The notes under the pieces: model-generated
Seen by the model: only the letters and a program-made list of their open reading frames with translations
Told to the model about the DNA's origin: nothing
The model's database searches: none
Virus record (IMG/VR): IMGVR_UViG_3300028840_001395
Span: 186,001 to 250,000 of that record
Length of the DNA: 64,000 nucleotides
Direction: 5' to 3' (one strand)
Part shown: positions 14,099 through 60,195 of the stretch, piece after piece
How the letters are laid out: the number at the start of each line of letters is the position of its first letter
Numbering within the stretch: the stretch's first letter is position 1
Program-made: the position numbers and the translations under genes

Positions 14099-14101
14099 TC
14101 T
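14073..14101 (+). promoter_or_regulatory. Phage motif promoter copy 10 (drives ligase C-half; overlaps endonuclease stop)
   Basis: GCTTAT-N17-TAGTCT then GAAGGAG and ATG; the TAG of the -10 box is the endonuclease stop codon. Confidence 0.8.
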
Positions 14102-14115
14102 AGGTGAAGGAGAAG

Positions 14116-26767: not shown

Positions 26768-26778
26768 GGGAGAAAGCG

Positions 26779-27609: not shown

Positions 27610-27649
27610 AACCTCTCCGTATCGGGTAGATCTAGTCGGAGGTGAGAAG

Positions 27650-28728
27650 ATGGCACGATGCAACGGGTGTGGGAAGTGGATGGGCGCGTTCGAGACCGCC
27701 ACTTACTGCGATGATTGCCGGGAGGATTCGAGCAATCAATGCTGTTCGGTCTGCGGGAAGCGGGATGATGGTCACCGGAGCGAATGCACCTGCGAGACGA
27801 ACAACTATGACCCGGACTTCGACTGATGGCGACTACACAAGATATCGCAGACCGCATCACTTCGGGACGCCTCTACCCGCTAGGAATTGCTTTGGAGAGA
27901 TGGGGCCAAAGTCGTTGGCCGGATTTCCCAGAGGTTCTGAAATGGCACCCTGACCCAACCCTCAATCGACTTGGGCGGTTGCGTGACTATCTCGTGTTCC
28001 ACTCGATTCAGGCTCCGTTCAAACGTCGCTTCCATGCAACCGTCCTCAACCTCCTGTTGACGGCAGCCTACCGCTTGCAGTTGTTCGGTGTGGCTGATTC
28101 CTACCGACGCAAGTTCTTGCGGAGTGACCAGCCCATCGGCATCCGATAGGAGGGACAGATGGCGACCGAACACCTGCTCTATGAGGGCATCACCTACGAG
28201 GTCGAGGCCCGCTGGGAAGAGTTCAACGGCGGCATCGTCTATCAGGTCGGGGTCATCTTCAAACAGGCACGGAACATCGCTATGGCCCCTCTCCGAGTGA
28301 GCGACCGGGGCAATGACCCCCGTGAGGCGATGCACCATCTGGTGATGCTCATCAACGACCTGAAGCTGGCCGGGGTCTTGAAGAAGATCGAGGGTCGCCA
28401 GGGCCTCTACTTCGACCCCGAGGCTGAGGTGCCCATCGACCTGCAGAACCGAGTCTCTTCGTGAGGGACTGTCATGGGTGAGACCGCCTACCTCCTGTTC
28501 CTCTGTCAGATGACCGACAGACCCCCGTATATCAAGTTCCTCGAAGCGGACGTGTACTCCGAGCGCCACCCCACCACGATGTCCGGCTACGTGTATCTCT
28601 ACCTGTCAGAATCCACCGGCACCTCCTTCAAAGAGGCCAAGGCCAACGTCTTGAAGAAGGCCAAGGCCAGGTGGGGCGATGACTGGGTGCAGGGGGTCTT
28701 GAGCGCCGGGATTGGGGTAATCAGGTAG
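27650..28728 (+). other. Four small hypothetical CDSs (27650-27826 Cys-rich, 27826-28149, 28159-28464, 28474-28728)
   Basis: ORFs with RBSs; first translated by hand (MARCNGCGKW...). Confidence 0.6.
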
Positions 28729-29115
28729 ATGACCCTGAAGTGCCCAGAGTGCGGGGCTCCGATGGAGCTTCGACCCAGCCAGTTCGGCAAGAACCGGGTG
28801 TACTACGCCTGTATCGCGGACGACTGCCGAGGAGCGCACGGGGCACACCCGGACGGGACGCCGTTGGGCAAACCCGCTGACCAGGCGACCAAGCGGATGC
28901 GGATGGCGGCTCATGCGGAGTTCGACAAGCTCTGGAAGCGGGGCGACTTCACCCGCAAGCAGGCCTACGCCTGGATGCAAGAGACGCTGGGGCTGACCAA
29001 GGAGGAGGCGCACATCGCCAACTTCGATATCCCGACCTGCAAGCGGCTCATCGAGGCCGTCTGGGCGAAGCTCGAAGCCAATGATGATTCGATACTCCCC
29101 GACGAGTGGAGGTAG
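28729..29115 (+). CDS. DUF3268-like zinc-finger protein
   Basis: CPECG...YYAC...GAHPDGTPLGKPAD...RMAAHAEFDKLWK...AYAW...HIANFD...C. Confidence 0.75.
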   Translation: MTLKCPECGAPMELRPSQFGKNRVYYACIADDCRGAHGAHPDGTPLGKPADQATKRMRMAAHAEFDKLWKRGDFTRKQAYAWMQETLGLTKEEAHIANFDIPTCKRLIEAVWAKLEANDDSILPDEWR

Positions 29116-29120
29116 CGACG

Positions 29121-29345
29121 ATGGCAGACCTGGCAGACATGATGGATGAGAACTCTGTCCGGCTCGAAGTCGAGGTCATCAAGATGGATGACCAGTCCAT
29201 GCTGGTCGAGTATGAGGGCGAGCAGGAGTGGATTCCCTACAGCCTCATCGAGGAGGAATCCGAGATCACCGAATTTTCCGAGGACGGCGAGGAGGGGGCG
29301 CTGGTCATCCCTCGCTGGAAGGCCGAGGACGTGGGCTTCGTCTAG
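29121..29345 (+). CDS. Small acidic hypothetical protein
   Basis: GGAGG RBS; EWIPYSLI...LVIPRWKA. Confidence 0.65.
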   Translation: MADLADMMDENSVRLEVEVIKMDDQSMLVEYEGEQEWIPYSLIEEESEITEFSEDGEEGALVIPRWKAEDVGFV

Positions 29346-29854
29346 GCCCACCCACGTCCATAGAGCGCACTCATGATCTTTTTCACGCACTGGGACACCG
29401 TATCTTGCGGTGTCAGGCGGAGATCGTGTCCTTTGGGCTTCTCGAAGGGGTCGTCAACCCCGGTGAAGTGAGGGAGATCGCCCCGTCTGGCAGCCTCCCA
29501 CATCCCCTTCACATCACGTTCCTCGCAGACCTCGGTAGGGGCGTCCATCCAGACCAGAATCACCCGGTCGAGCACCCTCTGAATATCTTCGCGGTCCTTC
29601 TCATAGGGTGTGATGTTGGCGGCGACAACACAGATTCCCTGACGGTTGACGACCCCAGCCACCTCACGGACACGCCGGAGGTTCTCCCTGCGGTCAGGCA
29701 AACTGAAGCCCAGGTCAGAACACAACCCTGTCCGCACAGCGTCCCCGTCGAGGGACAAGCACGGGGAGGGAAGAGAGGGAACCAGAACGCGGGCAATCGT
29801 GGTTTTGCCTGAGCATGGAAGGCCCATCAACCAGACGGTGAATCCGTACTTCAC
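29342..29854 (-). CDS. cysC: Adenylyl-sulfate (APS) kinase
   Basis: [52 protein letters not shown]. Confidence 0.93.
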
Positions 29855-30888
29855 TCGGACTCTTTCCCCGCCAACTTCAGGTCGTGGGCCACCATGAGCC
29901 GCACGAGTTCCTCGAACTTGACGGAGGGTGTCCATCCGAGGCTGTCCGCTGCCTTGGAAGCGTCACCCAGTAGCTCCACGACATCCGTGGGCCGGAAGTA
30001 TCTCGGGTCAACCTGAACGCGGACTCGCCCACGTTCGTCAACCCCGTGACGATGAACCCCCTCACCCAAGAACTCCAGGGGCATCCCAGCACACGCGAAC
30101 GCCTCCCGGCAGAAGTCCTCGACCGAGTGGTCCTCACCCGTGGCCAGCACGTAGTCCTCGGGTGCGTCCTGCTGGAGCATCCGCCACATGCCCTCCACGA
30201 ACTCGGGAGCGTATCCCCAGTCCCGGCGGGCAGCCAGGTTACCCAGGTAGAGGCAATCCTGTAGGCCGTGCTTGATGCGACCCACGGCCCGAGTGATCTT
30301 CCGGGTGACGAAGGTCTCGCCTCGACGCTCCGACTCATGGTTGAACAGGATGCCGTTGCAGGCGTAGAGGCCGTAGGCTTCCCGGTAGTTCACCGTCACC
30401 CAGTAAGCGTACAGCTTGGCCGCAGCGTAGGGGCTGCAAGGACGGAAAGGTGTGCTCTCGCTCTGGGGTGACTCCTGCACCTTGCCATACAGCTCCGAGG
30501 TCGAAGCCTGGTAGAAGCGGGTCTTGATTCTGGCGTCCTTGATCGCGTCGAGCAGGCGAATGGTTCCCAGTCCCGTGACTTCAGCGGTGTACTCGGGCAC
30601 CTCGAAGCTGACCTTGACGTGACTCTGCGCCGCCAGGTTGTAAATCTCGTCCGGTTCCAGGCGCTCAATCAGGCGGGAGATGTTCGACCCATCCGTCAGG
30701 TCGCCGTAGTGCAGGAACAGCGTGCGGTCGTTGACGTGGGGGTCTTGATAGAGATGGTCGATGCGAGCCGTGTTGAAGGAGGACGAGCGACGGATGATGC
30801 CGTGAACCTCGTAGCCCTTGGCCAGCAGCAGTTCAGCCAGGTACGATCCGTCCTGGCCGGTGATTCCTGTGATGAGCGCCTTCCTCAT
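29851..30888 (-). CDS. gmd: GDP-mannose 4,6-dehydratase
   Basis: [61 protein letters not shown]. Confidence 0.97.
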
Positions 30889-31793
30889 GCGTGCCTCTTG
30901 AACCAGTCGTAGGTCTTGCGAATGCCGTCCTCCAGCGAGGTCTGTGCCTGCCAGCCCAGATCCCGTAGTCGGCTCACGTCGAGCAGCTTCCGGGGCGTCC
31001 CGTCCGGCATGTCGGTGTCCCAGAGGATGTCACCCTCGTATCCCACCACTTCCTTCAGCAGGGAGGCCAGTTCCGCAATCGTGAGATCTTCACCCACCCC
31101 GACGTTGACGAAGTTGTCCCGTCCGTCCGCATCGAAGTGCTCCATCAGGAACACCAGAGCGTCGGCCAGGTCATCCACGTAGAGGAACTCCCGGCGGGGT
31201 GCCCCCGTCCCCCACAGAGTCACCGAGGGCAATCCTGCGACTTTGGCATCGTGGAAGCGCCGCAGTAGGGCGGGCAGGACGTGGCTCCCGTGGGGGTCGA
31301 AGTTGTCGCCGGGGCCGTAGAGGTTCGTGGGCATCGCGGCGATGAAGTTGGTGCCGTGCTGCCGGTTGTAGCTCTGGCACATCAGGATGCCCGCGATCTT
31401 GGCGATGGCGTAGGCGTCGTTGGTCGGCTCCAGTGGCCCGGTCAGGAGGTGATCTTCTTGCATCGGTTGCGGCGCGAGCTTGGGATAGATGCAGGATGAC
31501 CCGAGGAACAGCAGCTTGCGGACACCGTGGCGATAAGCTGCATCGATCACGTTGGTCTGGATCTGGAGGTTGACCCGAAGGAAGTCCGCCGGGTAGGTGT
31601 CGTTGGCCAGAATCCCGCCCACCTTGGCTGCTGCGAGGAATACACCTTCGGGCTGCTCCTCGGAGAAGAACTCATCCACCGCCTGCGGGTCGGTGAGGTC
31701 GAGCTGGTCACGGTCGCGGACGAGGGGCGGTGTTGGGAGCCTCCGACACAAGGCGGACCCGACGAGGCCCTTATGACCGGCTACATACCACAT
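30885..31793 (-). CDS. fcl: GDP-L-fucose synthase
   Basis: [60 protein letters not shown]. Confidence 0.96.
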
Positions 31794-32482
31794 CACAGGT
31801 CTCGTGGAGCCTGCGGGGCGACCGGTTTCTCCCGGCCCTGTGCCCTCTCCACATCCTTTGCACTGCTCAGCATACACTGGTCACAGTGGAGCGGGAGATC
31901 GCCAATCTTCTCTTTCCAGTCGGGGTTGTCCTCCAGCTTGAGGCCCTTCCCGAGCGGAACACAGCAGGGATAAACGAACCCGTCCAGGCAAATGGTCGTG
32001 GTGTACTTGTTATTGCAGTCTCGTGGGTCTTGCCCAGGAGCCGACCAATGCACCGTCTTGGCCTCGGCTAGCTGGACACGCCCCTCGCAGTAGTGCCGGA
32101 GTTCCTGGATGGTGTGAGTGTTGCTCTTGCATCCTGGGTGGGTCTCGGAGGTGAGGACAGGGACTCGCACGGCATCGAAGTAGTCGAGGATGTCCAAGTG
32201 ATCAAGGATCAGATCCCCGTTGGTGGCCAAGAAGATCTTGTCGTAGGAATAGCCCTCACTGACGGCCTTGACCACCTCCTTCAGGCGAGGGTGAAGCAAA
32301 GGCTCCCCTCCCGTGATGCAGAGGTTGGGGATGTGGCCGATCAGGGGGGCCAGCTTCATGAGGAAATCCACATCCCAGTGCTGCGCCTTCCTGTGAGGGA
32401 TCCGAAAGCTACACGAGGGGCATTTCCTGTTACACGCGGTCGTGATCATCAGAGCCAGCAAGTGGAGGGGTGCTGTAGCCAC
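31793..32482 (-). CDS. Radical SAM protein with short SPASM/twitch-like C-terminal region
   Basis: CNRKCPSC (CxxxCxxC), [15 protein letters not shown]-terminal Cys cluster. Confidence 0.85.
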
Positions 32483-32483
32483 T

Positions 32484-33146
32484 TCAGCCCTCCTCGACAG
32501 GGGCATTGAGATCTTCCACGATGGCTACCACCTCTCGATACAAGAGATGGGCGGCTCCCTTTCCAAGGTGTATTCCATCCTCGGTAAATCCCTCCAAGAT
32601 GGCCCCCTCGGAGTCCACCACCTTGCTCCAGAGATCGCAGTAGCTCACTCCTCGGTTGCGGCATTCCTGCGCCAACAAGTCGTTGACCTTGATCGTCAGT
32701 TCCCGCCGTTCCTCCAAGCTGCCTTCACAGGGGAAATTGCGATTACGGCTGTTCATCGCCGGACTCACACTTAAAACGAATGACTGAGACTTGGTAAGCC
32801 TGGAAAATTCGGTGATGGTGTTCAGGTAAGGATGGACGAGCTTGGGCAGGGTTTCTGATCCCTGCTGTTCTGTGATACGGACGAGATGGCACCGCACATC
32901 AATCTCTCCGGACACCCATGCGATAACACTACCTGGGACAATCCTCGGGAGCCAGTTCCAAGAGTCCTCGCCAATACCTGCTTCCTTGATGGAAGCAAGA
33001 CCTTGAACCCCATCTCGGCCCACCCGGTGCATTGTCACAGGGCCAAGATGATGGACACACCCCTTATTGGCCAGGGGGAGGAACAACTGAGTATGACTAT
33101 CCCCGATAGCATGGAGATTCTGGATTCTGGTGTATTCCTGGCTCAA
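32484..33146 (-). CDS. SGNH/GDSL-like hydrolase (possible O-acyl modifying enzyme)
   Basis: IGDSH, GEIDVRCH, DGIHL; TTG start inferred. Confidence 0.7.
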   Translation of the reverse strand: MSQEYTRIQNLHAIGDSHTQLFLPLANKGCVHHLGPVTMHRVGRDGVQGLASIKEAGIGEDSWNWLPRIVPGSVIAWVSGEIDVRCHLVRITEQQGSETLPKLVHPYLNTITEFSRLTKSQSFVLSVSPAMNSRNRNFPCEGSLEERRELTIKVNDLLAQECRNRGVSYCDLWSKVVDSEGAILEGFTEDGIHLGKGAAHLLYREVVAIVEDLNAPVEEG

Positions 33147-33156
33147 GAGGTACCTC

Positions 33157-33765
33157 TTACTCGAACTTGTAACCGAACCGCTCCAAGTCCTCTGCGAAGA
33201 TCCTCTCCAAGAGCGCCCGTGATTCGTCGTCGTAGTAGTCCCGGTAGTCCTTCTTCCGTTGGGTGATGTTGACGTGGGGGAACTCGATCCTCGGGAGGCC
33301 CATCCGCTTCCGAAGATCGTGGACACAGGTGGGCAGCTCCTCGAACTTGAGCACCACATCCACGATCTGCTGACCATCCTCGTCCGTGACGAACTCGGTC
33401 AGCGTGGCATAGGAGTTGACCCCGTAGACCCGAGGCTCCTTGGTCTTCATCTCGTACCAGCGCAGGTACTCTGCGAGGCTCTTGCCCTGCATGAACTTGT
33501 GGAAGTTGTGGCCCGGCTTCTGGACGATGTAGAAGTAGGTGGAAAGCATCCAGTCGAAGGGATTGCGGACCATCAGGAACTTCAAAGCATCGTTCCACTC
33601 TTGAATCCGGCCCTTCGACTCGAACCACTTCTTCACGTCCCGAGGCAGAACGTGCCCACCCAGGATATCATCGCCACAACCCTCGAACACCTTCCGAAGG
33701 GACATCCCCCCTGTGCGGAAGATGTGGAAGAACAGGTAATTGTCGTCAGCATTGAAAAGAGCCAC
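33157..33765 (-). CDS. Sulfotransferase family 2 protein
   Basis: FFHIFRTGGMSL (PAPS loop), VRNPFDWMLSTY, KFEEL, DYRDYYD, DLERFGYKF. Confidence 0.85.
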   Translation of the reverse strand: MALFNADDNYLFFHIFRTGGMSLRKVFEGCGDDILGGHVLPRDVKKWFESKGRIQEWNDALKFLMVRNPFDWMLSTYFYIVQKPGHNFHKFMQGKSLAEYLRWYEMKTKEPRVYGVNSYATLTEFVTDEDGQQIVDVVLKFEELPTCVHDLRKRMGLPRIEFPHVNITQRKKDYRDYYDDESRALLERIFAEDLERFGYKFE

Positions 33766-33806
33766 GGGTATATCCTTTCGGGTTCTCGGTCAGTTTGTCG
33801 TCCACC

Positions 33807-34541
33807 TTACTTCCGAATGAGCACGAACCCTGCACTCAGATAGGGACGCCTCGCTGACGGAAGGCTGTTGGTCTGTATGTCATCGTAGAACTCCCGAGCC
33901 TGCTCCCGATACGCCTCGGTGTCCGGCAGATCGGTCGGCTCGGCTACCGTGGCCAAGTCCTCCACGGCTGCGAACAGATCACGGAAAGCGTCCGCATCGA
34001 AGTTGAACTGCTCGGGCCAACTTTGGTGGGGTTCCGGCCACTCCCCTTGCTGGTAGTAAGTGGCCACCTCAAAGGCCGGGACAGTCACCACGAGGGGAGC
34101 ACCGGGCTTCAGGAGTGACAGCAGGTTCCTGACGATTCGCAGAATCTTGTCCCAGTCGTTGTGCTCGATGGCACTGAGGCTCAGGATGCCATCGAAGGAG
34201 CCGGGGTCAAGCATGGGAGTATCTTCCAGATCCGATTGGATCAGGGTGGCCCGAGTGATGCAGTCCTGGTGGTGATGCCCTGGCTTGACATCGACGTTCA
34301 CAGCTTCGCCGTAGTTCTCAGCCAGGAAGTGCTGCATCGAACTCTGACCACCTCCAGCATCCATCACACGGGCCTTGTCGTGCGGCTGCTGGACGTAGGT
34401 AGCCAGCTTCTCACAAGCCCAGGAGTACTCTGCCGTGTAGGGCCAACGATCTGGCCACTTATACCCAGGACGCCGCTTCTCTCGAATCACAGCATGTTGC
34501 TGAAGAACGTCTTCCACACGGTAGTCGAGGGGGATAAGCAT
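33807..34541 (-). CDS. Class I SAM-dependent methyltransferase
   Basis: RVMDAGGG, FDGILSLSAIEH, LLKPGAPLVVTVP. Confidence 0.8.
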   Translation of the reverse strand: MLIPLDYRVEDVLQQHAVIREKRRPGYKWPDRWPYTAEYSWACEKLATYVQQPHDKARVMDAGGGQSSMQHFLAENYGEAVNVDVKPGHHHQDCITRATLIQSDLEDTPMLDPGSFDGILSLSAIEHNDWDKILRIVRNLLSLLKPGAPLVVTVPAFEVATYYQQGEWPEPHQSWPEQFNFDADAFRDLFAAVEDLATVAEPTDLPDTEAYREQAREFYDDIQTNSLPSARRPYLSAGFVLIRK

Positions 34542-34546
34542 GAGAT

Positions 34547-37500
34547 TTACCTCTTGATTCCGAGAAGATTCAGAGAGACGGTGTCGTAGGATGACCAGTC
34601 CCTCACCGCCTTGATCTCCGGTACTTCGTTACTCTTCCATTCCTTGATATCCTTGAACCCTGCTGCGATCAGCAGCTTGGTCAGGGACTCCTTCACGAAG
34701 GTCTGCTTGTGGCGGTCGGGTTCCTCCGCCGCCTTGCGGAAGTCTCCGAACAGGGGAGCGTTGGGGTCTTTTCCGAACTTGTGCGACTCGACGCAGTTGG
34801 CCACGATGAGTCGCAGATCAGGAACCGCGACCCGAAGGATACCTCCAGGACGTAGCGCCTGGTGCCAGTTCCGTAGGATGTCGAGGGTTTCCTCGGCGTA
34901 GAAGTGCTCAAGGACATGGCAGGCGTAGATCTCGGAATAGGCCGCGCTCGGGAGAGCTTCGTGGGCGTCGAGCACCTGATCGACTGCCGGGCCGGGCCTC
35001 AAGTCCGTGTTGATGTAGCCCTTGATGTGCTTGTCGCCACAGGCGATGTGGAGCTTCAGTTCTTTCTGGGGCGGGGTGGGTTCCACGATGTCTACCTCGG
35101 GAATCGAGACAGTTTCATGGTTTCCGGTTGGGAGCGCCAAGCCCCTCTGTCGGCGTTCCTCCCGGACGATGGCGAGAAGTTGTTCCATTGCAACGTCCCA
35201 CGTCCAGTGGTCACGGGCCAGTTCGTATCCGGCCTGCTGAATGACAGCCCTGTCCGCATCCCGTTCGGGTCTCAACCAGTCCCGGAGTAGCTCGACAAGC
35301 TCCTCGTTGTCCTTCCAGATGACGCAGTTGACCCCATCTTGCAGACCGTAGCCTTCCATGTCATCGAAGTACTGGACGGCACAGAAGCCCTTGGTGATGA
35401 GGGAGTCGGGAAGTCGGTCGGAAGTGTAGCGGCGGAGCTTCTGGAAGAGGGACTGCACGACCACGACGCGGGCGACGGAATGAAGCTCTGCACGCCGAGC
35501 CCGTGCGATAAACGGGTGTGATAGGATGGGCTGGCGGAGCTTGTTCCAGGAATGTCCGTAGCAGACATACATCCCCGGAAGGGCCTTCTCGATGTCCAGC
35601 GCCATCTGAACGCGAGGTGCCACCCCCGGCCCCTTGTGGAACCCAGTGTGAGGAGACCCTGTGAAGCAGGCCTTCCCAGCCGCTTTCCAGTCCTTCGGAT
35701 TCCCCTGACGAGGCCCGTTGACGGTGGTGTCCGTCCCGATAATATGGTGCCCAGTCTTGGCCCGGACACCCATCTCTCTGAGCTTCTCGGCGTAGGTACA
35801 CTCCGACGAGAGGAACAGGTCAAGTTCCTTGCACTGATCTGCCTGCCACGCCTCAACCGGCTCGTCAATGTCCGTCCGGACATCCCCCGTCCACGACACG
35901 ATGAGGCAGTTCGGAGGGGCGAGCTTCCGCATCTGACGGATGATGCCCGAGTTGAAAGCCCTGTTCCCCTGCACCTGCATCCAGATCAGAGTTGGCTGGT
36001 GCGTCCTGATCAGCTCATAGACCTCTTCATACATCCGATTGAGACCGACCTTCTGCCTTCGTTCGTTCCAACGGATCGTCTGATATGGCCCCATCCTTGC
36101 CAAAGCCAGACAGTGACCATGTTGGGCTTCATGCGACCCGGCAAGAGAGACGTGCAGGACTCTCTCGGGAGGCCCGGCTTCAATCGGTGACCGCCGGTGA
36201 GGCATCCCCCGCTTAGGGTTGTACACGTTGGGCCAACCCATCGGGTCTCGGGTGATAGGCCTCGCGTACTTCTTGTTGTATTTCTTATGCCACGCATCCC
36301 GGTGCTTATTGAGGCGCGTTGAGTTGGCTTCCCTGTTGGGATCGTCCAGAGTCTCATTCACCAGGTCGATGAGCGTCACATCAGGCTTACGCTCCATCTT
36401 CCAACCCAGCCGATGTCCTCGCAGCCCCCAGGCCGAGTCTCCCCCGTAGGTGTGATGTGTCCGGGTGTTTTCGTCGCCCCAGAAGGCCCCGAAGCCTTCC
36501 GCGATGATGTCCTCGCACATCTCCCGGCGAGCAACGACCTGGTTGGGGTGAGGAAGACCAGGGGCTTGAGGGAAGTCCATCTTCATGTAGGTCTTACCCC
36601 GGTCACGGCTCATGTGAAAAGCCACGGCCCCGAGAGTTGGGTCGGAGTCCAGGTGCCGTATCGCGTTCGCTATCGACTTCCCTTCGATGATGATGTCGTC
36701 GTTGATCTGACAGATGAACCTGCCCTTGGACGCTTCATACGCCCGGTTGAAAGCCGGAATCGCCCCCTCCATCCCTCCCAGGATGGGCCGGATATCAGAC
36801 TGCTCCTTCATCCACGTCATGGATGTGTCGGACTCATCGCCGTAGGCGATGACGATCTCGTAGGTGTAGTCGGAATCCTTGAGGCTCTCGCGGACAGATG
36901 CCACGCATTCCTTGAGCATCTCCGGTCGGTTGACTGTTCCCAGAATCACCGAGCAGTCGATAGGAGCCGCCGTGACCATGCGAGAGATATCCCGCTGCAG
37001 ATCAGGATGGAGGGGGGGAGGGGCAGGCTCGGGGATAACCTCGGGAGGCTTCTGTGGATGCCTGTTCTTCCACTTTCGCACGGAGTCCCGCATCGGCTTC
37101 CGACCGATGCGGGAAGGAGCTTCCTCGACCGGAACCGGAGGCTGATCCCCCCGGAGAGACTTCAGGAGCTTCCTCATGTCCTCCGGAATGTCCTCTGCAT
37201 CATCGAGGCTACCCTGACCGATGATCTCGAAGGAGCCCTTGCGTGAACGACCTTCTCGCTCCAACACCGCCCGGTTCCAGATGTTGTCCGCGTGCTGCAA
37301 GCAGACGATGAGGTCGATCTCCTTGGTGATATCCTTGAACACCGGGCGGGTGTTCATCCCCTTGCGGAAAGCTGCGGCCATCGGGCCGTCTTTGCCCCGT
37401 GCCCGCTCCGGCCAACCCCCGACCTTGCGGAGATGCTCTCCTGCGAAGGAGATGCTCGTCCCGATGAGTCCCTGCTCGGCCCGGCCTGTCCACCGCATCA

Positions 37501-38524
37501 CCCGATCTTCGGCCAGCGCGTAGAACAAAACCTCCGCGACACCCGACCAGTGAGCACCCTCATCGTGAGCCCGACAGGCTGCAGCCAGGCGACCGATGGG
37601 CTGGATGTCGTCATCGTCAGCCAAGAGCACCAGGTCAACGGTCGGACCCGCCGCCTGAAGAATGGCGTTGAGCTTCGAGGTCACCGTCTGACTGGTCACC
37701 TCAACGTAGCGCACCCGCTCCATCTTCTGCACGAGGCCCTTGCCTGCATCGGTGGGCTCCCCACCGACCAGAATCTCGTAGTCCCAACCCGCAGGCACAG
37801 TCTGCTGCTGAAGTCGCTTCAGGCAGGCTTCGAGCAACTTGGGGCGATGGGTCGTGGCGACGAAGAACGCAGCCCTCTTGCTACGAGTGGGCTTGGTCTG
37901 TCTTGGACTGGGCTTGACGGTGGGTGTCACCTTGGGGGCAGTTTGGGGCTTCGGCTTGGGCTTCTTCTTGGGAGCAGGGACCGTCCGGTCAACAAGGCTT
38001 CGGGCCACTCGATAGGTGGCGAGGTTCTTGATATTGGGCCATTCCCGCAAGTACTGCTCGGAGACCATGTAGCAGTGGTCGAGCTTCCCCGCGTTCTCCA
38101 AGGCCACCACGGGCTGGGGGAGGATATCCTTCGCTTCCGCCTCCCCTACCAGATTCAGAGCACCCAGCTTGTCCGGGGAGAGCTTGCCCCACGTCTTGAT
38201 CGCGCTGGCGAAGAAGTGTTGCGGGAGCGTCAGGCCCGAATGCAAGAAGAAGTTGTAGTCGGCAGGGTGGTCAGCCCACTTCTGATGGCACCACTCCCGG
38301 TACACGGGGGCTGACAGCTTCCGCTTGGACAGGAAGTAGCCCCACCCCTGCTTCTGGATGATCTTCCAGGCCGCGCTGAAGTCGCTCTTGAGCGCATTGT
38401 TGCAGACGATGACGTGAACCTGATAGAGCCGGGTCAACGTCTCCAGGTGGGCCAGCAGATTCTTGAGCCCGTTGGCCCCACTCCCTGCCGACACGAGGAT
38501 GGAGATCGAAGGCTTCTTGGTCAT
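34547..38524 (-). CDS. Giant multidomain glycosyltransferase (about three GT2-like domains + GT-B/CgeB-like domain + C-terminal methyltransferase), ~1325 aa
   Basis: SILVS; VATTHRP...LADDDD; SVILGTVNRP...QINDD; TSDRLPDSL...WTWD; KLHIACG...YINTD...CHVLEHF...LRPGGILRVAVPD. Confidence 0.85.
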   Translation of the reverse strand: MTKKPSISILVSAGSGANGLKNLLAHLETLTRLYQVHVIVCNNALKSDFSAAWKIIQKQGWGYFLSKRKLSAPVYREWCHQKWADHPADYNFFLHSGLTLPQHFFASAIKTWGKLSPDKLGALNLVGEAEAKDILPQPVVALENAGKLDHCYMVSEQYLREWPNIKNLATYRVARSLVDRTVPAPKKKPKPKPQTAPKVTPTVKPSPRQTKPTRSKRAAFFVATTHRPKLLEACLKRLQQQTVPAGWDYEILVGGEPTDAGKGLVQKMERVRYVEVTSQTVTSKLNAILQAAGPTVDLVLLADDDDIQPIGRLAAACRAHDEGAHWSGVAEVLFYALAEDRVMRWTGRAEQGLIGTSISFAGEHLRKVGGWPERARGKDGPMAAAFRKGMNTRPVFKDITKEIDLIVCLQHADNIWNRAVLEREGRSRKGSFEIIGQGSLDDAEDIPEDMRKLLKSLRGDQPPVPVEEAPSRIGRKPMRDSVRKWKNRHPQKPPEVIPEPAPPPLHPDLQRDISRMVTAAPIDCSVILGTVNRPEMLKECVASVRESLKDSDYTYEIVIAYGDESDTSMTWMKEQSDIRPILGGMEGAIPAFNRAYEASKGRFICQINDDIIIEGKSIANAIRHLDSDPTLGAVAFHMSRDRGKTYMKMDFPQAPGLPHPNQVVARREMCEDIIAEGFGAFWGDENTRTHHTYGGDSAWGLRGHRLGWKMERKPDVTLIDLVNETLDDPNREANSTRLNKHRDAWHKKYNKKYARPITRDPMGWPNVYNPKRGMPHRRSPIEAGPPERVLHVSLAGSHEAQHGHCLALARMGPYQTIRWNERRQKVGLNRMYEEVYELIRTHQPTLIWMQVQGNRAFNSGIIRQMRKLAPPNCLIVSWTGDVRTDIDEPVEAWQADQCKELDLFLSSECTYAEKLREMGVRAKTGHHIIGTDTTVNGPRQGNPKDWKAAGKACFTGSPHTGFHKGPGVAPRVQMALDIEKALPGMYVCYGHSWNKLRQPILSHPFIARARRAELHSVARVVVVQSLFQKLRRYTSDRLPDSLITKGFCAVQYFDDMEGYGLQDGVNCVIWKDNEELVELLRDWLRPERDADRAVIQQAGYELARDHWTWDVAMEQLLAIVREERRQRGLALPTGNHETVSIPEVDIVEPTPPQKELKLHIACGDKHIKGYINTDLRPGPAVDQVLDAHEALPSAAYSEIYACHVLEHFYAEETLDILRNWHQALRPGGILRVAVPDLRLIVANCVESHKFGKDPNAPLFGDFRKAAEEPDRHKQTFVKESLTKLLIAAGFKDIKEWKSNEVPEIKAVRDWSSYDTVSLNLLGIKR

Positions 38525-39546
38525 CAGAACCAATCCAGGCCGAACACGGCGTTGCGGACTTCATCCCAGTAGGCGAACTCTCGACACTCATCCAAGGAGT
38601 ACGTCTTGCGAAGCTCCGACCCGAACGTCGTGATGCGGGCCAACAGCCCAAGCTCGTTCTGGAAGTGCCACCACTCGGCTCCGCCCGCGTTGCCCGAAGT
38701 GAAGAAGCTCCGCCGGGCGCGGATGCGGTTGAAGCCGTGCTTGAGGGCGACATCGGTGAAGCTGAAGAACACCCCCTGCACCCGCTTGGTTGTCGGGATG
38801 TGGACGGTATTGCCCCCCGAGTCCTTCTGCTCGATGACCTGCCATGCCTCGATGGTCATCTTACCACCGGCCACGGAGCCGCCGTAGAGCTTCTTGATGA
38901 GCGCATCCTTGTCCAACGAGGACCGGCACCAGACCTCCCAGTGTCGGTCGGAGTGCGGGTCGGCTTCGATGATGTAGGGGTCTGTCTCGGGATCGGCCAT
39001 CCCTGACAAGGGAGCGAGGTCGAAGGCCCGTCCGACATAGTGGAAGGACTTCTTCGAGCGGTTGGCGTTCGACCCCGCCGTGAGCAACCTCCGGCCACCC
39101 GCCGAGGTGACGATGCCACCGAGGTCGTGAACCTCGTCATAGAGGGCCTGGTAGAAGGGTGCGATGTCTGACCGGAGAACGGTGCCCTCGTTGCCCTGGC
39201 CGTTGAACTGGTCAGCCGGGCAGGCGGGCCAGTAGGGCTTGGTCAGGTTGAGCTGGCTGCCGTCATCGTCGCTCGGCTCGATCTCGGTATCGGGGGTCAC
39301 ATCTACGTTGTAGTCGATGTGGTAGGCTGCTCCCCCGTCGCCCAGAGCGAAGTTGTAGGCCGAAAGGGTGCTGTCCCCCACCTCACCATCCGAAAGGAGC
39401 CCAGAGGCCGTCTGGAAGGCGCTGACGGCTCTTTCTGTCCCCTCTCCGAACACCCCATCTGCGATGCCGGGATGATAGCCCAGGTAGGCGAGTCCTAGCT
39501 GGAGGTTGCGGACATCCTCTCCGCGTGATCCTATCCTCAGAATCAT
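38524..39546 (-). CDS. Peptidoglycan-binding + M15-like zinc peptidase (endolysin or virion lysin)
   Basis: PG_binding_1 pattern LRIGSRGEDVRNLQ...DGVFGEGTERAVSAFQ...DGEVG; SFHYVGRAFD and EWWHFQ. Confidence 0.85.
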   Translation of the reverse strand: MILRIGSRGEDVRNLQLGLAYLGYHPGIADGVFGEGTERAVSAFQTASGLLSDGEVGDSTLSAYNFALGDGGAAYHIDYNVDVTPDTEIEPSDDDGSQLNLTKPYWPACPADQFNGQGNEGTVLRSDIAPFYQALYDEVHDLGGIVTSAGGRRLLTAGSNANRSKKSFHYVGRAFDLAPLSGMADPETDPYIIEADPHSDRHWEVWCRSSLDKDALIKKLYGGSVAGGKMTIEAWQVIEQKDSGGNTVHIPTTKRVQGVFFSFTDVALKHGFNRIRARRSFFTSGNAGGAEWWHFQNELGLLARITTFGSELRKTYSLDECREFAYWDEVRNAVFGLDWF

Positions 39547-39621
39547 GGCCCCTCCACGGTCGATTCTATCTACCGATACGCGATAGACAAATCACCATAC
39601 CACCGAGGGGCTTGTGAGGGG

Positions 39622-39936
39622 TCAGTTGATGTGGAAATGAACCTCGACCCGTCGAGGCTCGGGACGGGTCTCTCGTTCGATCCAGTTGATGAGCGTCCCC
39701 CTGTACATGGACATCAGTTCGGCGGCGTCCTCCCAGGTGCCACCGGCCTGCTCCACGTCCCGCACGAAGTCCAGAGCTTGTTGGCGGGTCTTGTCGTGGT
39801 AACGGCATCGACGGCCCCGCGACCGGGCCTCCTTGGCGATGCGCTTCATCTTGACCAGGAACCGAAGGTGCTCCGTTGCGTCCATCCGAACCTCCTCTGT
39901 ATAGACTTCGGGGTGTTGCAGGTGGCGTGCCATCAC
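39622..39936 (-). CDS. Small hypothetical protein, possible HTH, probably leaderless
   Basis: TATAAT just upstream of GTG/ATG; WEDAAELMSMYRGTLINW resembles an HTH. Confidence 0.6.
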   Translation of the reverse strand: MMARHLQHPEVYTEEVRMDATEHLRFLVKMKRIAKEARSRGRRCRYHDKTRQQALDFVRDVEQAGGTWEDAAELMSMYRGTLINWIERETRPEPRRVEVHFHIN

Positions 39937-40152
39937 TATTATATGCTCCCCACCCCCGTATTGATTGCAGTTTTTTCAAGTCGCCCGCTTAGCCTCATGG
40001 CGTTTACCACAGAGTAAATGGCGATTGACTCCAGAGTAAACACCCGTCCCGAAGTCGGGTATGGCTGATACAAGCCCATCTTAGCTATAGTGCCGGGCCG
40101 TCTCAGGGTCACCCCCTTGGCACACCAGGGGAGCGTCTGAGCCAAAGAAAGT

Positions 40153-40731
40153 TCAGGTGAGGTCGCGGGCGTCCCGCAGCTTGTCGAGGGTGTCCTGCAT
40201 CAGATCTACGGCCTTCTGGCTCCGGCCCTGTCGCAGAATGTAGGACGGGTGGTAGGCCGCGAGGAGAGGAATATCTCCCGCGTCGAGGTAGGTCAGATCC
40301 GTCCGCCGGGCCAGTGACCCCATCGTCGTGAACTGAAGAGACAGACGGCAGCCGGAGAAGCGACCCAGGGTGATGATGGCAGCGGGCTTGATGACCTGGA
40401 TTTGTTGTTCCAGGTAGGGCAGGCAGGCGACAAGCTCGCCGGACTCAGGGTCTCGGTTGCCGGGCGGACGGCACTTGAGCATGTTGGCGATGAATACGTG
40501 GTTCCGGCTCATCCCGGCCTTCTTCAAGAGCTTGTCGAGCAGATGCCCCGACCGGCCCACGAAGGGGAGGCCCTGCTCATCCTCATCCTTGCCCGGAGCC
40601 TCGCCCACAATCATGATGCCTGCAGCGTCGTTGCCCGCTCCGAACACGGGGTTGGTTCGGGTCGCGTGGAGCGGGCAGCGGGTACAGACGGCTATCGCCG
40701 TGTCGATCTCCTTGAGTGACTCGGGCATCAC
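40153..40731 (-). CDS. Uracil-DNA glycosylase family 4 (4Fe-4S)
   Basis: [34 protein letters not shown]. Confidence 0.92.
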
Positions 40732-41546: not shown

Positions 41547-41548
41547 GC

Positions 41549-42124: not shown

Positions 42125-42136
42125 GCCCCTACTACC

Positions 42137-52240: not shown

Positions 52241-52242
52241 AG

Positions 52243-60133: not shown

Positions 60134-60195
60134 CACATCCTCCCGCAAGGGTATTCGTCTCCACCCCTACGGAAATATCAAAGCCCTACCGAGAA

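What the first reader, a model, noticed from the sequence alone, without database searches (positions are those of the whole stretch)
29342..39546. Self-contained sulfated, fucosylated, methylated glycan pathway translationally coupled to a peptidoglycan peptidase
Seen: one minus-strand run of lysin, 1325-aa multi-GT/methyltransferase (TGATG overlap with the lysin stop), methyltransferase, sulfotransferase, SGNH, radical SAM, fcl, gmd, cysC; no motif promoter inside. Known: Gmd+Fcl make GDP-L-fucose; CysC makes PAPS, the sulfotransferase donor; giant viruses (e.g. PBCV-1 A064R, a GT+methyltransferase fusion) glycosylate their capsids with such enzymes. Inference: a late operon that builds a sulfated fucan-like glycan on the virion or remodels the host surface. 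Donor synthesis plus sulfation in a bacteriophage is unusual.
Basis: partly seen in the sequence, partly recalled or inferred. Interest (0 to 1): 0.7.

Follow-up and report, generated by a model that had tools for sequence, protein, structure and literature searches.

The report
Huge-phage operon for a sulfated glycan
A 436-kb uncultured marine or sediment phage carries, directly behind its cell-wall-cutting enzyme gene, a tightly packed 10-kb operon of soluble enzymes that should build a methylated, fucose-type, sulfated sugar chain inside the infected cell, most likely on its own particles; giant algal viruses and mycobacteriophages glycosylate their virions, but I found no report of sulfation in phages.

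Summary
Nine minus-strand genes (29342-39546) form one tightly coupled unit: a peptidoglycan-binding LAS/M15 peptidase, a 1325-aa multi-glycosyltransferase/methyltransferase, a methyltransferase, a sulfotransferase, an SGNH enzyme, a radical-SAM enzyme, fcl, gmd and an APS kinase. The largest intergenic gap is 41 nt and four junctions overlap. The genome is a complete 435.8-kb phage. Contigs from three metagenomes span both borders without a difference, so this is not a misassembly.

"Self-contained" is wrong: the phage has no ATP sulfurylase and no GDP-mannose pyrophosphorylase, so it needs host APS and GDP-mannose.

Related uncultured phages keep the same lysin-then-glycosyltransferase order with a colinear but variable gene set, so this is a variable glycan island in a conserved position. 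The sulfotransferase and APS kinase were not seen in the colinear part of the one distant relative that could be read. The core glycosyltransferase was found almost only in phage-like contigs. In unrelated small phages it sits in head or tail gene modules.

No operon protein has a membrane segment, and the genome encodes no flippase-like protein, so the acceptor must be cytoplasmic. Best guess is virion proteins (about 0.45). Rivals are phage DNA (a divergent ThyA homolog is adjacent) and host lipid-linked glycans.

It is a new variant of a known kind.

The parts
39563..39590 (-). Sigma-70-like promoter candidate (TTGTCT-16-TAGAAT) 17 nt upstream of the lysin start. It is the only minus-strand match in or near the operon.
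   Evidence: The number of such sites in the scanned region is not above chance, so this is a positional lead only.
38524..39546 (-). Lysin-like protein (340 aa): N-terminal PG_binding_1 domain (aa 8-63) plus a C-terminal LAS/M15-type Zn peptidase domain (aa ~100-338) with an SxHxxGxAxD ... ExWH motif. It has no signal peptide or membrane segment.
   Evidence: Pfam. 29-sequence alignment A1 with S167, Y170, A174, W293, H294 invariant and H169, D176, E291 at 90% or more. The profile aligns to 1lbu. AF2 model pLDDT 90. VIA Z 6.0-6.8 to LdcB, VanX, VanY and Ply500. No TM segment. It is the only PG_binding_1 protein in the genome, and no SLT or T4-lysozyme family was found.
34547..38524 (-). 1325-aa soluble multi-domain glycosyltransferase/methyltransferase. 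Its start overlaps the lysin stop (TGATG).
37154..38524 (-). N-terminal module of the 1325-aa protein (aa 1-457): one or two GT-A-like domains (Glyco_tranf_2_3, below Pfam's cut-off). It is homologous to the separate glycosyltransferase genes that follow the lysin in related phages.
   Evidence: Pfam E=3e-4. 33-34% identity to the post-lysin GTs of L018 and L019. Language-model features resemble viral GT2 clusters, (a lead only).
35135..36982 (-). Core GT2 + Glyco_trans_1_2 module (aa 515-1130) with an invariant NDD motif. It was found almost only in phage-like contigs and moves between unrelated phages.
   Evidence: Pfam. Alignment A2. 75% identity to L014, 60% to L015, 54% to L007, 49% to L006. 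dN/dS 0.13.
34550..35065 (-). C-terminal class-I SAM methyltransferase domain (aa 1154-1325). In most homologs this domain lies N-terminal of the GT2 domain or is a separate gene.
   Evidence: Pfam. Domain order from tblastn coordinates.
33807..34541 (-). Second SAM-dependent methyltransferase (244 aa).
   Evidence: Pfam. Motif I (VMDAGGG). 35-56% identical partners next to the GT in L002, L007, L015 and L019.
33157..33765 (-). Sulfotransfer_2-family (carbohydrate-type) sulfotransferase, 202 aa.
   Evidence: PF03567, 36.6 bits against a cut-off of 22. phrog_3347. Only 14 homologs; the RNPF..S 3'-PAPS motif is invariant, and the 5'-PSB loop reads HIFRTGG (Arg where distant members have Lys). 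76% identical copy next to the GT in L014.
32484..33146 (-). SGNH/GDSL-family esterase or acyltransferase (220 aa, TTG start), with GDS (block I) and DGIH (block V).
   Evidence: Pfam weak, below the cut-off. Motifs in the translation. 46-48% identical homologs after the GT in L006 and L019. dN/dS 0.21.
31793..32482 (-). Small radical-SAM enzyme (229 aa; CNRKCPSC cluster motif plus a C-terminal Cys-rich stretch), of unknown reaction. Its stop overlaps the fcl start (TGATG).
   Evidence: Pfam and NCBIfam generic hits only. The nearest Atlas clusters are small viral radical-SAM families. 51% identical homolog directly before the fcl/gmd fusion in L019, 32-33% in L015, 39% in L006.
30885..31793 (-). 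GDP-L-fucose synthase-like enzyme (fcl), 302 aa.
   Evidence: NF047922, 476 bits against a cut-off of 500. Epimerase Pfam hit.
29851..30888 (-). GDP-mannose 4,6-dehydratase (gmd), 345 aa.
   Evidence: TIGR01472, 557 bits against a cut-off of 415. 83% identical to the sister phage and 76-81% to bacterial MAG proteins (the named ones are Myxococcota).
29342..29854 (-). Adenylyl-sulfate (APS) kinase (cysC), 170 aa. It is the last gene of the operon, and its end meets the end of a convergent plus-strand gene.
   Evidence: TIGR00455, 154.7 bits against a cut-off of 138.7. P-loop and LDGD motifs.

Best explanation
This is a real, phage-owned operon that builds a decorated oligosaccharide in the cytoplasm of the infected cell.

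How it works (inferred from the families unless marked):
- The host supplies GDP-mannose and APS.
- Phage Gmd and Fcl convert GDP-mannose to a GDP-6-deoxyhexose, most likely GDP-L-fucose.
- Phage CysC converts APS to PAPS.
- The 1325-aa protein, with two firm and up to four glycosyltransferase domains plus a methyltransferase domain, assembles and O-methylates a short glycan.
- The second methyltransferase, the sulfotransferase and the SGNH enzyme then add methyl, sulfate and (de)acyl decorations.
- The conserved small radical-SAM enzyme, always close to the sugar genes, performs an unknown step on the sugar or nucleotide sugar.

Acceptor: every enzyme is soluble and the phage encodes no initiating lipid-phosphate transferase, flippase, polymerase or ABC exporter. 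The acceptor must therefore be reachable from the cytoplasm. I take it to be virion proteins made at the same time.

Timing: the operon is probably transcribed with the lysin gene, which would make it late.

Evolution: the locus is a variable glycan island fixed downstream of the lysin gene in a family of uncultured large phages. The sulfation pair (sulfotransferase plus APS kinase) appears to be an addition in this lineage.

Shown here: gene identities, operon structure, conservation, soluble nature, and dependence on the host.

Inferred: sugar identity, order of steps, timing, and the acceptor.
For: - Families and curated thresholds support the gene identities.
- Tight coupling between genes.
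- The genome is a complete phage with direct terminal repeats, about 70 tRNAs and a tmRNA.
- Contigs of three runs span both borders with no differences and even depth.
- Codon usage is typical of the genome for most operon genes (SGNH and cysC are lower).
- dN/dS is 0.13-0.21 for four cassette genes.
- No TM segment in any operon protein, and no genome protein with four or more TM segments.
- The lysin-then-GT order, and partly the upstream UDG, are conserved in related phage contigs (neighbouring genes 44-64% identical). The operon is colinear in L019: lysin, GTs, MT domain, GT2+GT1_2, SGNH, MT, rSAM, fcl/gmd fusion..
- The core GT is nearly confined to phage-like contigs: 13 proteins in 5.8 billion, one locus in 185,579 species genomes, three IMG/VR contigs..
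- In unrelated small phages the core GT lies after terminase and portal (L014, together with the sulfotransferase), after head protease and a capsid-like protein (L007), and after P2-type baseplate and tail-fibre genes (L006)..
- A further phage-like contig pairs a Glyco_trans_1_2 gene, this sulfotransferase family and a methyltransferase.
- A distant viral contig keeps GT, APS kinase, MT, gmd and fcl together.
- Precedents: PBCV-1 A064R/A061L and Megavirinae clusters with sulfate-metabolism genes (PMC9614988); glycans on mycobacteriophage capsid and tail-tube proteins (as summarised in PMC12619734).
Against: - No direct evidence of expression, of timing or of any glycan. No RNA run holds the sequence.
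- In this phage the operon lies among nucleotide-metabolism and DNA genes (ThyA homolog, NT5C, OMP decarboxylase, UDG, ligase), roughly 75 kb or more from the cluster of very large, presumably structural genes that starts near genome position 300 kb.
- A position inside structural modules in other phages is weak evidence, because DNA-modification clusters have also been reported there (abstract of 10.1101/2023.12.21.572611).
- The sulfotransferase has Arg, not Lys, in the PAPS-binding loop, and Trp where distant members have Arg. Activity is therefore unproven.
- Fcl scores just below its equivalog cut-off.
- No known fucosyltransferase family was recognised.
- The sister phage appears to lack fcl and cysC, so the chemistry differs even between close relatives.
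Confidence: 0.5

Rival explanations
1. The glycan is put on phage DNA. The adjacent divergent thymidylate-synthase homolog would make 5-hydroxymethyl-dUMP. The phage DNA would then carry 5-hmU, and the operon would glycosylate and further decorate that hydroxyl, giving a hypermodified base that blocks host nucleases.
For: - A ThyA homolog (26764-27609) lies about 1.7 kb beyond the end of the operon, and a ThyA-family gene plus NT5C also follow the operon in the sister phage.
- It is the only ThyA/ThyX-family gene in the genome.
- It keeps the catalytic Cys and the Asn177 equivalent (uracil type), but has His147Leu, Gln165Phe and a non-matching N-terminal half.
- Its best matches among cultured phages include PaMx11/Epa5-type phages, which make thymidine hypermodifications from 5-hmdU (PMC8989533), and Erwinia phages that I recall as ViI-like.
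- NT5C, thymidylate kinase, OMP decarboxylase and UDG are neighbours.
- Phage GTs do build mono- to tri-saccharides on DNA bases (PMC13326640; 10.1101/2023.12.21.572611).
- A radical-SAM enzyme acts on DNA in phage M6 (PMC8989533).
Against: - The 5-hydroxycytosine synthase signature D169N is not present (against PMC13326640).
- No C5 DNA methyltransferase is encoded.
- The operon's kinase scores above the curated APS-kinase cut-off, so it is not a 5-hmU DNA kinase, and it sits in one operon with a sulfotransferase. No other 5-hmU DNA kinase and no aGPT-Pplase was searched for in the genome.
- The cassette's homologs in L006, L007, L014 and L015 have no ThyA, TET or nucleotide genes in the called neighbourhoods.
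- Methylated, sulfated multi-sugar chains on DNA are unknown, and extra negative charge and bulk would work against dense packaging (inference).
- The ThyA homolog may simply supply dTMP.
Confidence: 0.15
2. The enzymes remodel a host envelope glycan. They would act at the cytoplasmic face on host undecaprenyl-linked O-antigen, capsule or exopolysaccharide intermediates, which the host's own ABC transporter or flippase then exports. This would change the cell surface during infection, for example to block superinfection or to keep released virions from sticking.
For: - Multi-domain soluble glycosyltransferases combined with methyltransferases are typical of ABC-transporter-dependent O-antigen synthesis (from my own knowledge: WbdA/WbdD of E. 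coli O9a).
- gmd, fcl and sulfation genes are classic surface-polysaccharide genes.
- In L006 the cassette sits after the tail-fibre genes. From my own knowledge this is a common cargo position in P2-like phages.
- gmd is 76-81% identical to bacterial homologs.
Against: - No initiating transferase, exporter or any polytopic membrane protein is encoded in the phage.
- The core GT is essentially absent from 185,579 bacterial and archaeal species genomes. The single hit is a phage-like contig. That is unexpected if the GT acted on a host polysaccharide scaffold.
- The genome looks like a large lytic phage, and surface conversion is mainly a trait of temperate phages (from my own knowledge). No lysogeny genes were searched for.
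- The island is conserved at a fixed place across a phage family with very different GC contents, which probably means different hosts.
Confidence: 0.2
3. The conserved lysin-glycosyltransferase pairing is functional rather than regulatory. Either the M15 protein itself is the glycosylated substrate, or the pathway acts on peptidoglycan precursors.
For: - The lysin gene is followed within -1 to +4 nt by a glycosyltransferase gene in this phage, in L018 and in L019. In the sister phage a 244-aa gene of unknown family holds the lysin's position and overlaps the GT by 1 nt.
- Lysin identity between these phages is only 42-43% and the GT content varies.
- The M15 domain carries a family-specific beta-hairpin insertion (aa ~229-262) of unknown role.
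Against: - Shared ancestry of these phages explains the synteny.
- The same GT cassette occurs without any called lysin neighbour in L006, L007, L014 and L015.
- The sister phage's 244-aa protein has no PG_binding_1 domain on record.
- Endolysins with an N-terminal PG-binding domain are ordinary in large phages of Gram-negative hosts, for example phiKZ gp144, which is among the structural matches.
Confidence: 0.08
4. The block is a host fragment misassembled into the phage contig.
For: gmd and fcl are close to bacterial homologs. In run X3 the assembly breaks inside gmd/fcl, where short words are shared with other organisms.
Against: - A single Logan contig in X1 (97.6 kb) and one in X2 (22 kb) cover 26800-42500 with no differences and flat depth. 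The X3 contigs bridge both borders.
- The exact GT protein is on five contigs.
- The sister phage has the same flanks, UDG on one side and ThyA on the other, around a homologous operon.
- Codon usage is phage-like.
Confidence: 0.01

Closest known systems
Chlorovirus PBCV-1 capsid glycosylation: A064R (GT-GT-methyltransferase), A061L (second methyltransferase), virus-encoded GMD and GMER (A064R and A061L from PMC9614988; virus-encoded GMD/GMER and the cytoplasmic location from my own knowledge)
   Same: A virus-encoded, soluble machinery. One polypeptide combines several glycosyltransferase domains with a methyltransferase domain. A separate second methyltransferase is present. The virus makes its own GDP-6-deoxyhexose through Gmd and Fcl/GMER. 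The glycans carry methylated deoxy-sugars.
   Different: The host is a eukaryote and the virus is an NCLDV. No sequence homology was demonstrated here; there is only a language-model resemblance of the N-terminal part to NCLDV GT2 clusters. PBCV-1 has no sulfotransferase, APS kinase, SGNH or radical-SAM partner. The PBCV-1 acceptor (major capsid protein Vp54) is proven; here it is not.
Megavirinae fibril-glycosylation gene clusters containing sulfate-metabolism genes (Moumouvirus australiensis Ma457/Ma461; Tupanvirus R499 SAT/APS kinase; PMC9614988)
   Same: A viral glycan gene cluster that combines multi-domain glycosyltransferases, methyltransferases and PAPS-pathway genes. The content is variable and clade-specific. 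Sulfation is predicted from the genes only.
   Different: These are giant viruses of amoebae. Tupanvirus carries the sulfurylase step as well, whereas this phage has only the kinase. No dedicated carbohydrate sulfotransferase is mentioned in the passages I read. No homology was tested.
   Same: Phage-encoded glycosyltransferases decorate capsid and tail-tube subunits in the cytoplasm. This shows that tailed phages can glycosylate their own virions.
   Different: No match between this GT and any of 50,697 phage records. Those clusters are much smaller, and I know of no sugar-nucleotide synthesis, sulfation, SGNH or radical-SAM genes in them. The hosts are Actinobacteria.
Phage DNA sugar-hypermodification clusters (arabinosyl-5-hydroxycytosine of RB69/DLP3, hexosyl-5hoC of RL38JI, PMC13326640; 5hmC glycosylation clusters, 10.1101/2023.12.21.572611)
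   Same: A phage cluster with several glycosyltransferases plus nucleotide-sugar synthesis, next to a thymidylate-synthase homolog and nucleotide kinases or phosphatases.
   Different: The diagnostic D169N of 5hoC synthases is absent, and there is no C5 methyltransferase. The GTs described there are single-domain GT-B enzymes; here the protein is a 1325-aa multi-domain enzyme. Methyl, sulfate and acyl decorations are not known on DNA glycans.
Bacterial ABC-transporter-dependent O-antigen assembly (multi-domain WbdA with the WbdD methyltransferase terminator) and Bacillus spore-crust glycosylation (CgeB, a Glyco_trans_1_2 protein). Both are recalled from my own knowledge and were not tested.
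   Same: Soluble or peripheral multi-domain glycosyltransferases work with methyltransferases at the cytoplasmic side. CgeB-type domains decorate a protein shell assembled inside a cell.
   Different: The bacterial systems have a lipid-linked primer and an exporter. None is encoded here, and the core GT is missing from bacterial genomes.

Membership tests
GDP-L-fucose de novo pathway (Gmd + Fcl) | GDP-mannose 4,6-dehydratase scoring at equivalog level | tested here: met
   TIGR01472, 556.7 bits against a cut-off of 415.
GDP-L-fucose de novo pathway (Gmd + Fcl) | GDP-L-fucose synthase scoring at equivalog level | tested here: inconclusive
   NF047922, 476.4 bits against a cut-off of 500, matched over the full length. 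A related GDP-6-deoxyhexose reductase/epimerase is not excluded.
GDP-L-fucose de novo pathway (Gmd + Fcl) | Own supply of GDP-mannose (ManC-type nucleotidyltransferase) | tested here: not met
   No PF00483 match in the complete genome; the control rang in 14 of 14 genomes.
PAPS synthesis (sulfate activation) | APS kinase | tested here: met
   TIGR00455, 154.7 bits against a cut-off of 138.7. P-loop and LDGD motifs are present.
PAPS synthesis (sulfate activation) | ATP sulfurylase (Sat or CysDN) | tested here: not met
   No PF01747 and no PF01507 match in the genome.
Carbohydrate sulfotransferases (Pfam Sulfotransfer_2) | Family profile match above the curated cut-off | tested here: met
   PF03567, 36.6 bits against a cut-off of 22. 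phrog_3347, E=1.6e-11.
Carbohydrate sulfotransferases (Pfam Sulfotransfer_2) | PAPS-binding motifs (5'-PSB loop with Lys; 3'-PB R-x-P...S) | tested here: inconclusive
   RNPF..S is invariant. The 5'-PSB loop reads HIFRTGG, with Arg in the five closest sequences, P0165-P0169 (also in P0173), and Lys in the more distant ones. Trp replaces the second Arg of the 3'-PB motif.
LAS / MEROPS M15 peptidoglycan peptidases (VanY, LdcB, Ply500 type) | Zn-ligand and catalytic motifs H-x6-D and E-x-x-H | tested here: met
   The SxHxxGxAxD ... ExWH residues are conserved in 90-100% of 29 homologs. The motif definition is from my own knowledge.
LAS / MEROPS M15 peptidoglycan peptidases (VanY, LdcB, Ply500 type) | LAS fold | tested here: met
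   In the model (pLDDT 90), aa ~100-338 align only to LAS enzymes apart from PG-binding domains: LdcB Z 6.8, VanX 6.7, VanY 6.6, Ply500 6.0, LysB4 5.5, Hedgehog N-domain 5.1. The Z values are modest. The profile also aligns to 1lbu residues 9-163.
LAS / MEROPS M15 peptidoglycan peptidases (VanY, LdcB, Ply500 type) | Match to a curated M15 family model | tested here: not met
   No Pfam M15 model matches the window protein. One of the 29 homologs hits Peptidase_M15_3 at E=0.007.
Virus-encoded virion glycosylation (PBCV-1 or mycobacteriophage type) | Glycan covalently attached to virion structural proteins | not testable with these tools
   This needs virions and glycoproteomics.
Virus-encoded virion glycosylation (PBCV-1 or mycobacteriophage type) | Soluble virus-encoded GTs with no dependence on a secretory or export pathway | tested here: met
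   No TM segments in the operon proteins and no polytopic protein in the genome (Kyte-Doolittle scan).
Phage DNA sugar hypermodification clusters | Enzyme that creates a hydroxyl-bearing base (5hoC synthase with D169N; C5-MT plus TET; or dUMP/dCMP hydroxymethylase) | tested here: inconclusive
   D169N is not met and Asn177 is kept. There is no C5-MT. The TET search was uninformative because the control was silent. A divergent dUMP-type ThyA homolog is present and could be a hydroxymethylase.
Cell-surface polysaccharide pathways (Wzx/Wzy or ABC dependent) | Initiating polyprenyl-phosphate transferase and an exporter or flippase encoded with the GTs | tested here: not met
   No predicted protein with four or more TM segments among 449 called genes. 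The specific Pfam families were not searched one by one.

The most novel reading that the evidence does not exclude
A family of uncultured large marine and sediment phages carries a fast-evolving 'serotype locus', a glycan island fixed behind the lysin gene. In this member it coats the virion with a sulfated, methylated, fucose-containing glycan. That would be the first sulfated glycoconjugate made by a bacteriophage. Such a polyanionic coat resembles marine sulfated polysaccharides. It could govern adsorption to particles, escape from grazers or host receptors, or recognition by host defences. The cassette that builds it moves between unrelated phage morphotypes.
Probability: 0.3. Interest if true: 0.8.

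Novelty: new variant of a known kind. Interest (0 to 1): 0.62.

Why it matters
Virus-made glycans are established for giant viruses of eukaryotes and, recently, for mycobacteriophages. They affect antigenicity, stability and host recognition.

This locus would extend that to huge environmental phages and add three things:
- A full decoration tool-kit in one operon: methyl, sulfate, acyl and an unknown radical-SAM step.
- Partial metabolic self-supply: GDP-6-deoxyhexose and PAPS.
- A population-genetic pattern. The island sits at a fixed anchor next to the lysin gene, its content varies, and one cassette is shared with unrelated phages. This pattern resembles bacterial O-antigen loci and suggests diversifying selection on the phage's own surface.

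I found no report of sulfation by phage enzymes in the searchable literature.

The core GT2 + Glyco_trans_1_2 enzyme, found almost only in phage-like contigs, and the small viral radical-SAM enzyme are uncharacterised families with clear partners, so they are tractable targets for biochemistry.

If DNA turns out to be the acceptor instead, a sulfated glycosyl base would be a new class of DNA hypermodification. Either outcome is informative.

Tried and rejected
- Single-sequence AlphaFold model of the lysin: useless (pLDDT 33). It was repeated with a 29-sequence alignment.
- Sequence search of the 1325-aa protein against PDB chains: nothing significant.
- Megablast of the whole operon, tblastn of the GT, the sulfotransferase and the M15 domain against 50,697 phage records: no matches.
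- Single-protein scan of IMG/VR with the GT: nothing. The alignment-based scan found three contigs.
- APS-kinase hits in Ralstonia phage RsoM2USA and in the 462-kb uncultured phage LR756500 have no glycan context that I could recognise. Not pursued.
- Cluster look-up for organism names of the lysin and gmd homologs gave no names.
- No DNA was available for the sister contig or for the 111-kb sulfotransferase contig. Only their gene tables were used.
- The Freeman et al. 2023 paper is not in the library.
- The Tet_JBP family search was uninformative because its control was silent.
- No RNA-seq run holds the sequence, so expression and timing could not be examined.
- Host identity was not resolved. 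The only hints are Myxococcota among the named best gmd matches and a lysin architecture typical of phages of Gram-negative hosts.
- An alternative genetic code was considered because of a CUA-anticodon tRNA, and rejected. TAG ends 163 of 449 called genes, and coding density is 90.5% under the standard code.
- The misassembly hypothesis was rejected.

Full report
**What the window is.** The window is bases 186001-250000 of a 435,804-bp IMG/VR virus record with direct terminal repeats, rated complete. The genome has about 62% GC and carries about 70 tRNA genes and a tmRNA. My rough gene call gives 449 genes covering 90.5% of the sequence under the standard code. The stop codons are TGA 249, TAG 163 and TAA 37. 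It is therefore a huge tailed-phage-type genome that reads with the standard code. Three public runs hold the sequence: two sediment metagenomes and one seawater metagenome.

**Checking the observation.** After choosing starts by overlap and Shine-Dalgarno context, the genes are:
- lysin-like gene, 38524-39546
- 1325-aa glycosyltransferase, 34547-38524
- methyltransferase, 33807-34541
- sulfotransferase, 33157-33765
- SGNH, 32484-33146
- radical SAM, 31793-32482
- fcl, 30885-31793
- gmd, 29851-30888
- cysC, 29342-29854

Junctions are -1 nt (TGATG), 5, 41, 10, 1, -1 (TGATG), -4 (ATGA) and -4 (GTGA). No sigma-70-like site lies on the minus strand inside the run. One lies at 39590-39563, just before the lysin gene, though the number of such sites in the region is at chance level. 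gmd and the APS kinase pass NCBI's equivalog cut-offs. fcl falls just short, 476 against 500. The SGNH protein has the GDS and DxxH blocks, the radical-SAM protein has CX3CX2C, the methyltransferase has motif I, and CysC has the P-loop and LDGD.

**The 'lysin'.** Pfam sees only the N-terminal PG_binding_1 domain. An exhaustive HMMER search found many full-length homologs of about 320 aa. In an alignment of 29 of them, the residues of an SxHxxGxAxD ... ExWH pattern are invariant or nearly so. From my own knowledge this is the metal-binding and catalytic signature of VanY/M15 (LAS) peptidases. The profile aligns to the Streptomyces Zn DD-peptidase 1lbu through the first motif. With the alignment, AlphaFold gives pLDDT 90. 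Apart from PG-binding domains, the structural matches to aa ~100-338 are all LAS enzymes: LdcB, VanX, VanY, VanXY, Ply500, LysB4, Hedgehog N-domain and MepA, with Z 4.6-6.8. 'Peptidoglycan peptidase' is therefore supported. It is the only PG_binding_1 protein in the genome, and no SLT or T4-lysozyme family member was found. That makes it the best endolysin candidate, although other lysin families were not searched.

**Not a misassembly, and not a fresh host fragment.** Single Logan contigs from two runs cover 26800-42500 with no differences and flat depth. In the third run, contigs bridge both borders and break only inside gmd/fcl, where short words are shared with other organisms. The exact GT protein occurs on five contigs. 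Codon usage of the lysin, gmd, fcl and the sulfotransferase is typical of the genome; only SGNH (z = -2.4) and cysC (z = -1.6) are low. Four cassette genes have dN/dS of 0.13-0.21 against relatives, and the lysin 0.47.

**Not self-contained.** The complete genome has no ATP sulfurylase of either type and no NTP_transferase (with positive controls). It has only one GT2-matching gene. The phage therefore tops up two host pathways, APS to PAPS and GDP-mannose to a GDP-6-deoxyhexose, rather than running them from scratch.

**Anatomy of the 1325-aa protein.**
- aa 1-457 contain one weakly supported GT-A domain, and possibly a second one.
- aa 515-1130 are a GT2 domain plus a Glyco_trans_1_2 domain, with many invariant residues including an NDD motif.
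- aa 1154-1325 are a class-I methyltransferase domain.

Relatives show that this protein is a fusion. In L018 and L019, the genes that follow the lysin match aa 5-457 at 33-34% identity. In L019 a separate 170-aa gene matches the methyltransferase domain at 70%, and the next gene matches aa 518-1135 at 40%. In most homologs the methyltransferase domain precedes the GT2 domain. Only here and in L014 does it follow.

**Conservation: the main new result.**

*Sister phage.* A sister phage (44-kb contig, GT 63% identical) has this order: UDG, a 244-aa gene of unknown family in the lysin's place, the GT, two methyltransferases, two sulfotransferases, a 173-aa gene, gmd, and then a convergent ThyA-family gene and NT5C.

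*More distant relatives.* These share neighbouring genes at 44-64% identity. They also place a 42-43% identical lysin directly before glycosyltransferase genes.
- In L019 the operon is colinear with this one: lysin, GT2, GT2, a 331-aa gene, the MT domain, GT2+GT1_2, SGNH (48%), MT (35%), radical SAM (51%) and an fcl/gmd fusion. No sulfotransferase or APS kinase appears in the part that could be read.
- L018 (47% GC) has UDG, the lysin, a different 1162-aa multi-GT, and a GT-D-like/ATP-grasp gene.

So the locus is a variable glycan island at a conserved position in a phage family, and the sulfation pair looks like a lineage-specific addition.

*Unrelated phages.* The core GT cassette also occurs elsewhere:
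- L014: after Terminase_6N and a P22/SU10-type portal, 75% identical and followed by a 76% identical sulfotransferase.
- L007: after a head protease and a capsid-like protein.
- L006: after P2-type baseplate and tail-fibre genes, with SGNH, MT and radical SAM.
- L015: with radical SAM, GT1_2 and MT.
- The 72-kb IMG/VR contig L002/L013: with APS kinase, MT, gmd and fcl.

*Rarity.* The core GT has 13 homologs in 5.8 billion proteins. It has one locus in 185,579 species genomes, and that locus is the phage-like L006 contig. It has none among 50,697 phage records. The sulfotransferase has 14 homologs. One lies in a phage-like 111-kb contig, which carries Acb2/Tad1- and Tad2-like genes, next to a Glyco_trans_1_2 gene and a methyltransferase.

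**Where the glycan goes.** None of the operon proteins has a predicted membrane segment. No called protein in the genome has four or more. The phage therefore brings no primer transferase, flippase, polymerase or exporter, and the acceptor must be accessible in the cytoplasm.

I favour virion proteins, for four reasons:
- The cassette was found almost only in phage-like contigs.
- It recurs inside head or tail modules of unrelated small phages.
- It is co-transcribed with the likely endolysin.
- The gene logic closely matches PBCV-1 (A064R GT-GT-MT, second methyltransferase A061L, own GMD/GMER) and the Megavirinae clusters that include sulfate-metabolism genes (PMC9614988). Tailed-phage virion glycosylation is also established in mycobacteriophages (as cited in PMC12619734).

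This is an inference. In this genome the operon sits among DNA and nucleotide genes, not structural genes.

**The DNA rival.** The neighbouring ThyA homolog is the only ThyA/ThyX gene in the genome.
- It retains the catalytic Cys and the uracil-specifying Asn.
- It lacks the D169N change that marks 5-hydroxycytosine synthases (PMC13326640).
- It differs at the His147 and Gln165 equivalents.
- Its best cultured-phage matches include PaMx11-type phages, which derive thymidine hypermodifications from 5-hmdU, and Erwinia phages that I recall as ViI-like (PMC8989533).

With NT5C, thymidylate kinase, OMP decarboxylase and UDG nearby, a 5-hmdU pathway is conceivable, and its hydroxyl could be glycosylated.

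Against this:
- There is no C5 methyltransferase.
- The kinase in the operon is a bona fide APS kinase.
- The cassette's other genomic contexts lack nucleotide genes.
- Bulky anionic glycans on DNA are unprecedented.

I give this about 0.15. Remodelling of host lipid-linked glycans gets about 0.2, and a direct functional tie to the lysin or peptidoglycan about 0.08.

**Verdict.** The locus is best filed as a new variant of virus-encoded glycosylation machinery. It is notable for its sulfation module, for its radical-SAM and SGNH partners, for a core glycosyltransferase found almost only in phage-like contigs, and for being a variable island anchored next to the lysin gene in a family of uncultured large phages. 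The acceptor, the sugar identity, the timing and the host remain to be shown.

Noticed in passing
window 55943-56033 (-): A 91-nt tRNA with a CUA anticodon (called tRNA-Pyl by ARAGORN), which is an amber-suppressor-type tRNA. It stands alone, far from the two big tRNA arrays at genome positions 85-123 kb. Yet TAG ends 163 of 449 called genes and coding density is 90.5% under the standard code, so genome-wide recoding is not indicated. Stage-specific or gene-specific read-through was not examined.
   Followed up: partly
window 26764-27609 (+), with 25140-25700, 24178-25143, 48161-48796 and 40153-40731: The only ThyA-family gene of the phage is highly divergent. Only profile positions 111-215 match. 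The catalytic Cys and the Asn177 equivalent are kept, with His147Leu and Gln165Phe. It sits with NT5C, OMP decarboxylase, thymidylate kinase and a family-4 UDG. It may be a dUMP hydroxymethylase, which would mean non-canonical thymidine in the DNA.
   Followed up: partly
window 12163-14946 (+): The NAD-dependent DNA ligase is split. The adenylation and OB domains lie at 12163-13302 and the HhH and BRCT domains at 14104-14946. An ORF between them (13271-14098) encodes a TnsA-like/endonuclease-I-type nuclease. The sister phage has one 657-aa ligase. This looks like a homing-endonuclease-type insertion. Whether it is an intron, an intein or a true split gene was not examined.
   Followed up: partly
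window 16813-18489 (+), 59096-60148 (-) and 52234-52713 (+): A 558-aa protein has a PARP catalytic domain, a 350-aa protein has a WGR domain, and a T4 gp30.3/NADAR-like protein is also present. Together these suggest ADP-ribosylation and its reversal are encoded by the phage.
   Followed up: no
window 39622-39885 (-) and 39990-40060: A small gene (87 aa, weak HTH_23 match) lies between UDG and the lysin gene. Upstream of it are a TATAAT-like box and two copies of TTTACTCTG about 24 nt apart. This may be a local regulator with its operator or promoter.
   Followed up: no
window 40728-41564 (-) and 41549-42124 (-): Two adjacent genes are paralogs that share an N-terminal block (..LGLTPLD.FI.. 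and [14 protein letters not shown]). Neither has a Pfam or PHROG match.
   Followed up: no
window 29342-29345: The operon's last gene (cysC) and the convergent plus-strand gene 29106-29345 end on overlapping bases, so no intergenic space is left for a terminator. The only terminator-like hits nearby lie inside coding sequence.
   Followed up: no
L019 20089-20972 and beyond (ENA ERZ4201018 contig): In a related phage, the fcl-like and gmd-like domains are fused into one 642-aa protein that directly follows the radical-SAM gene. This supports a functional link between the radical-SAM enzyme and GDP-6-deoxyhexose chemistry.
   Followed up: partly
genome C1:90688-91048 and 85246-122868: A phage-encoded tmRNA (tag ANDEAVLQAA) lies next to two arrays that hold nearly a full tRNA set, including several ARAGORN calls with odd anticodon loops.
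   Followed up: no
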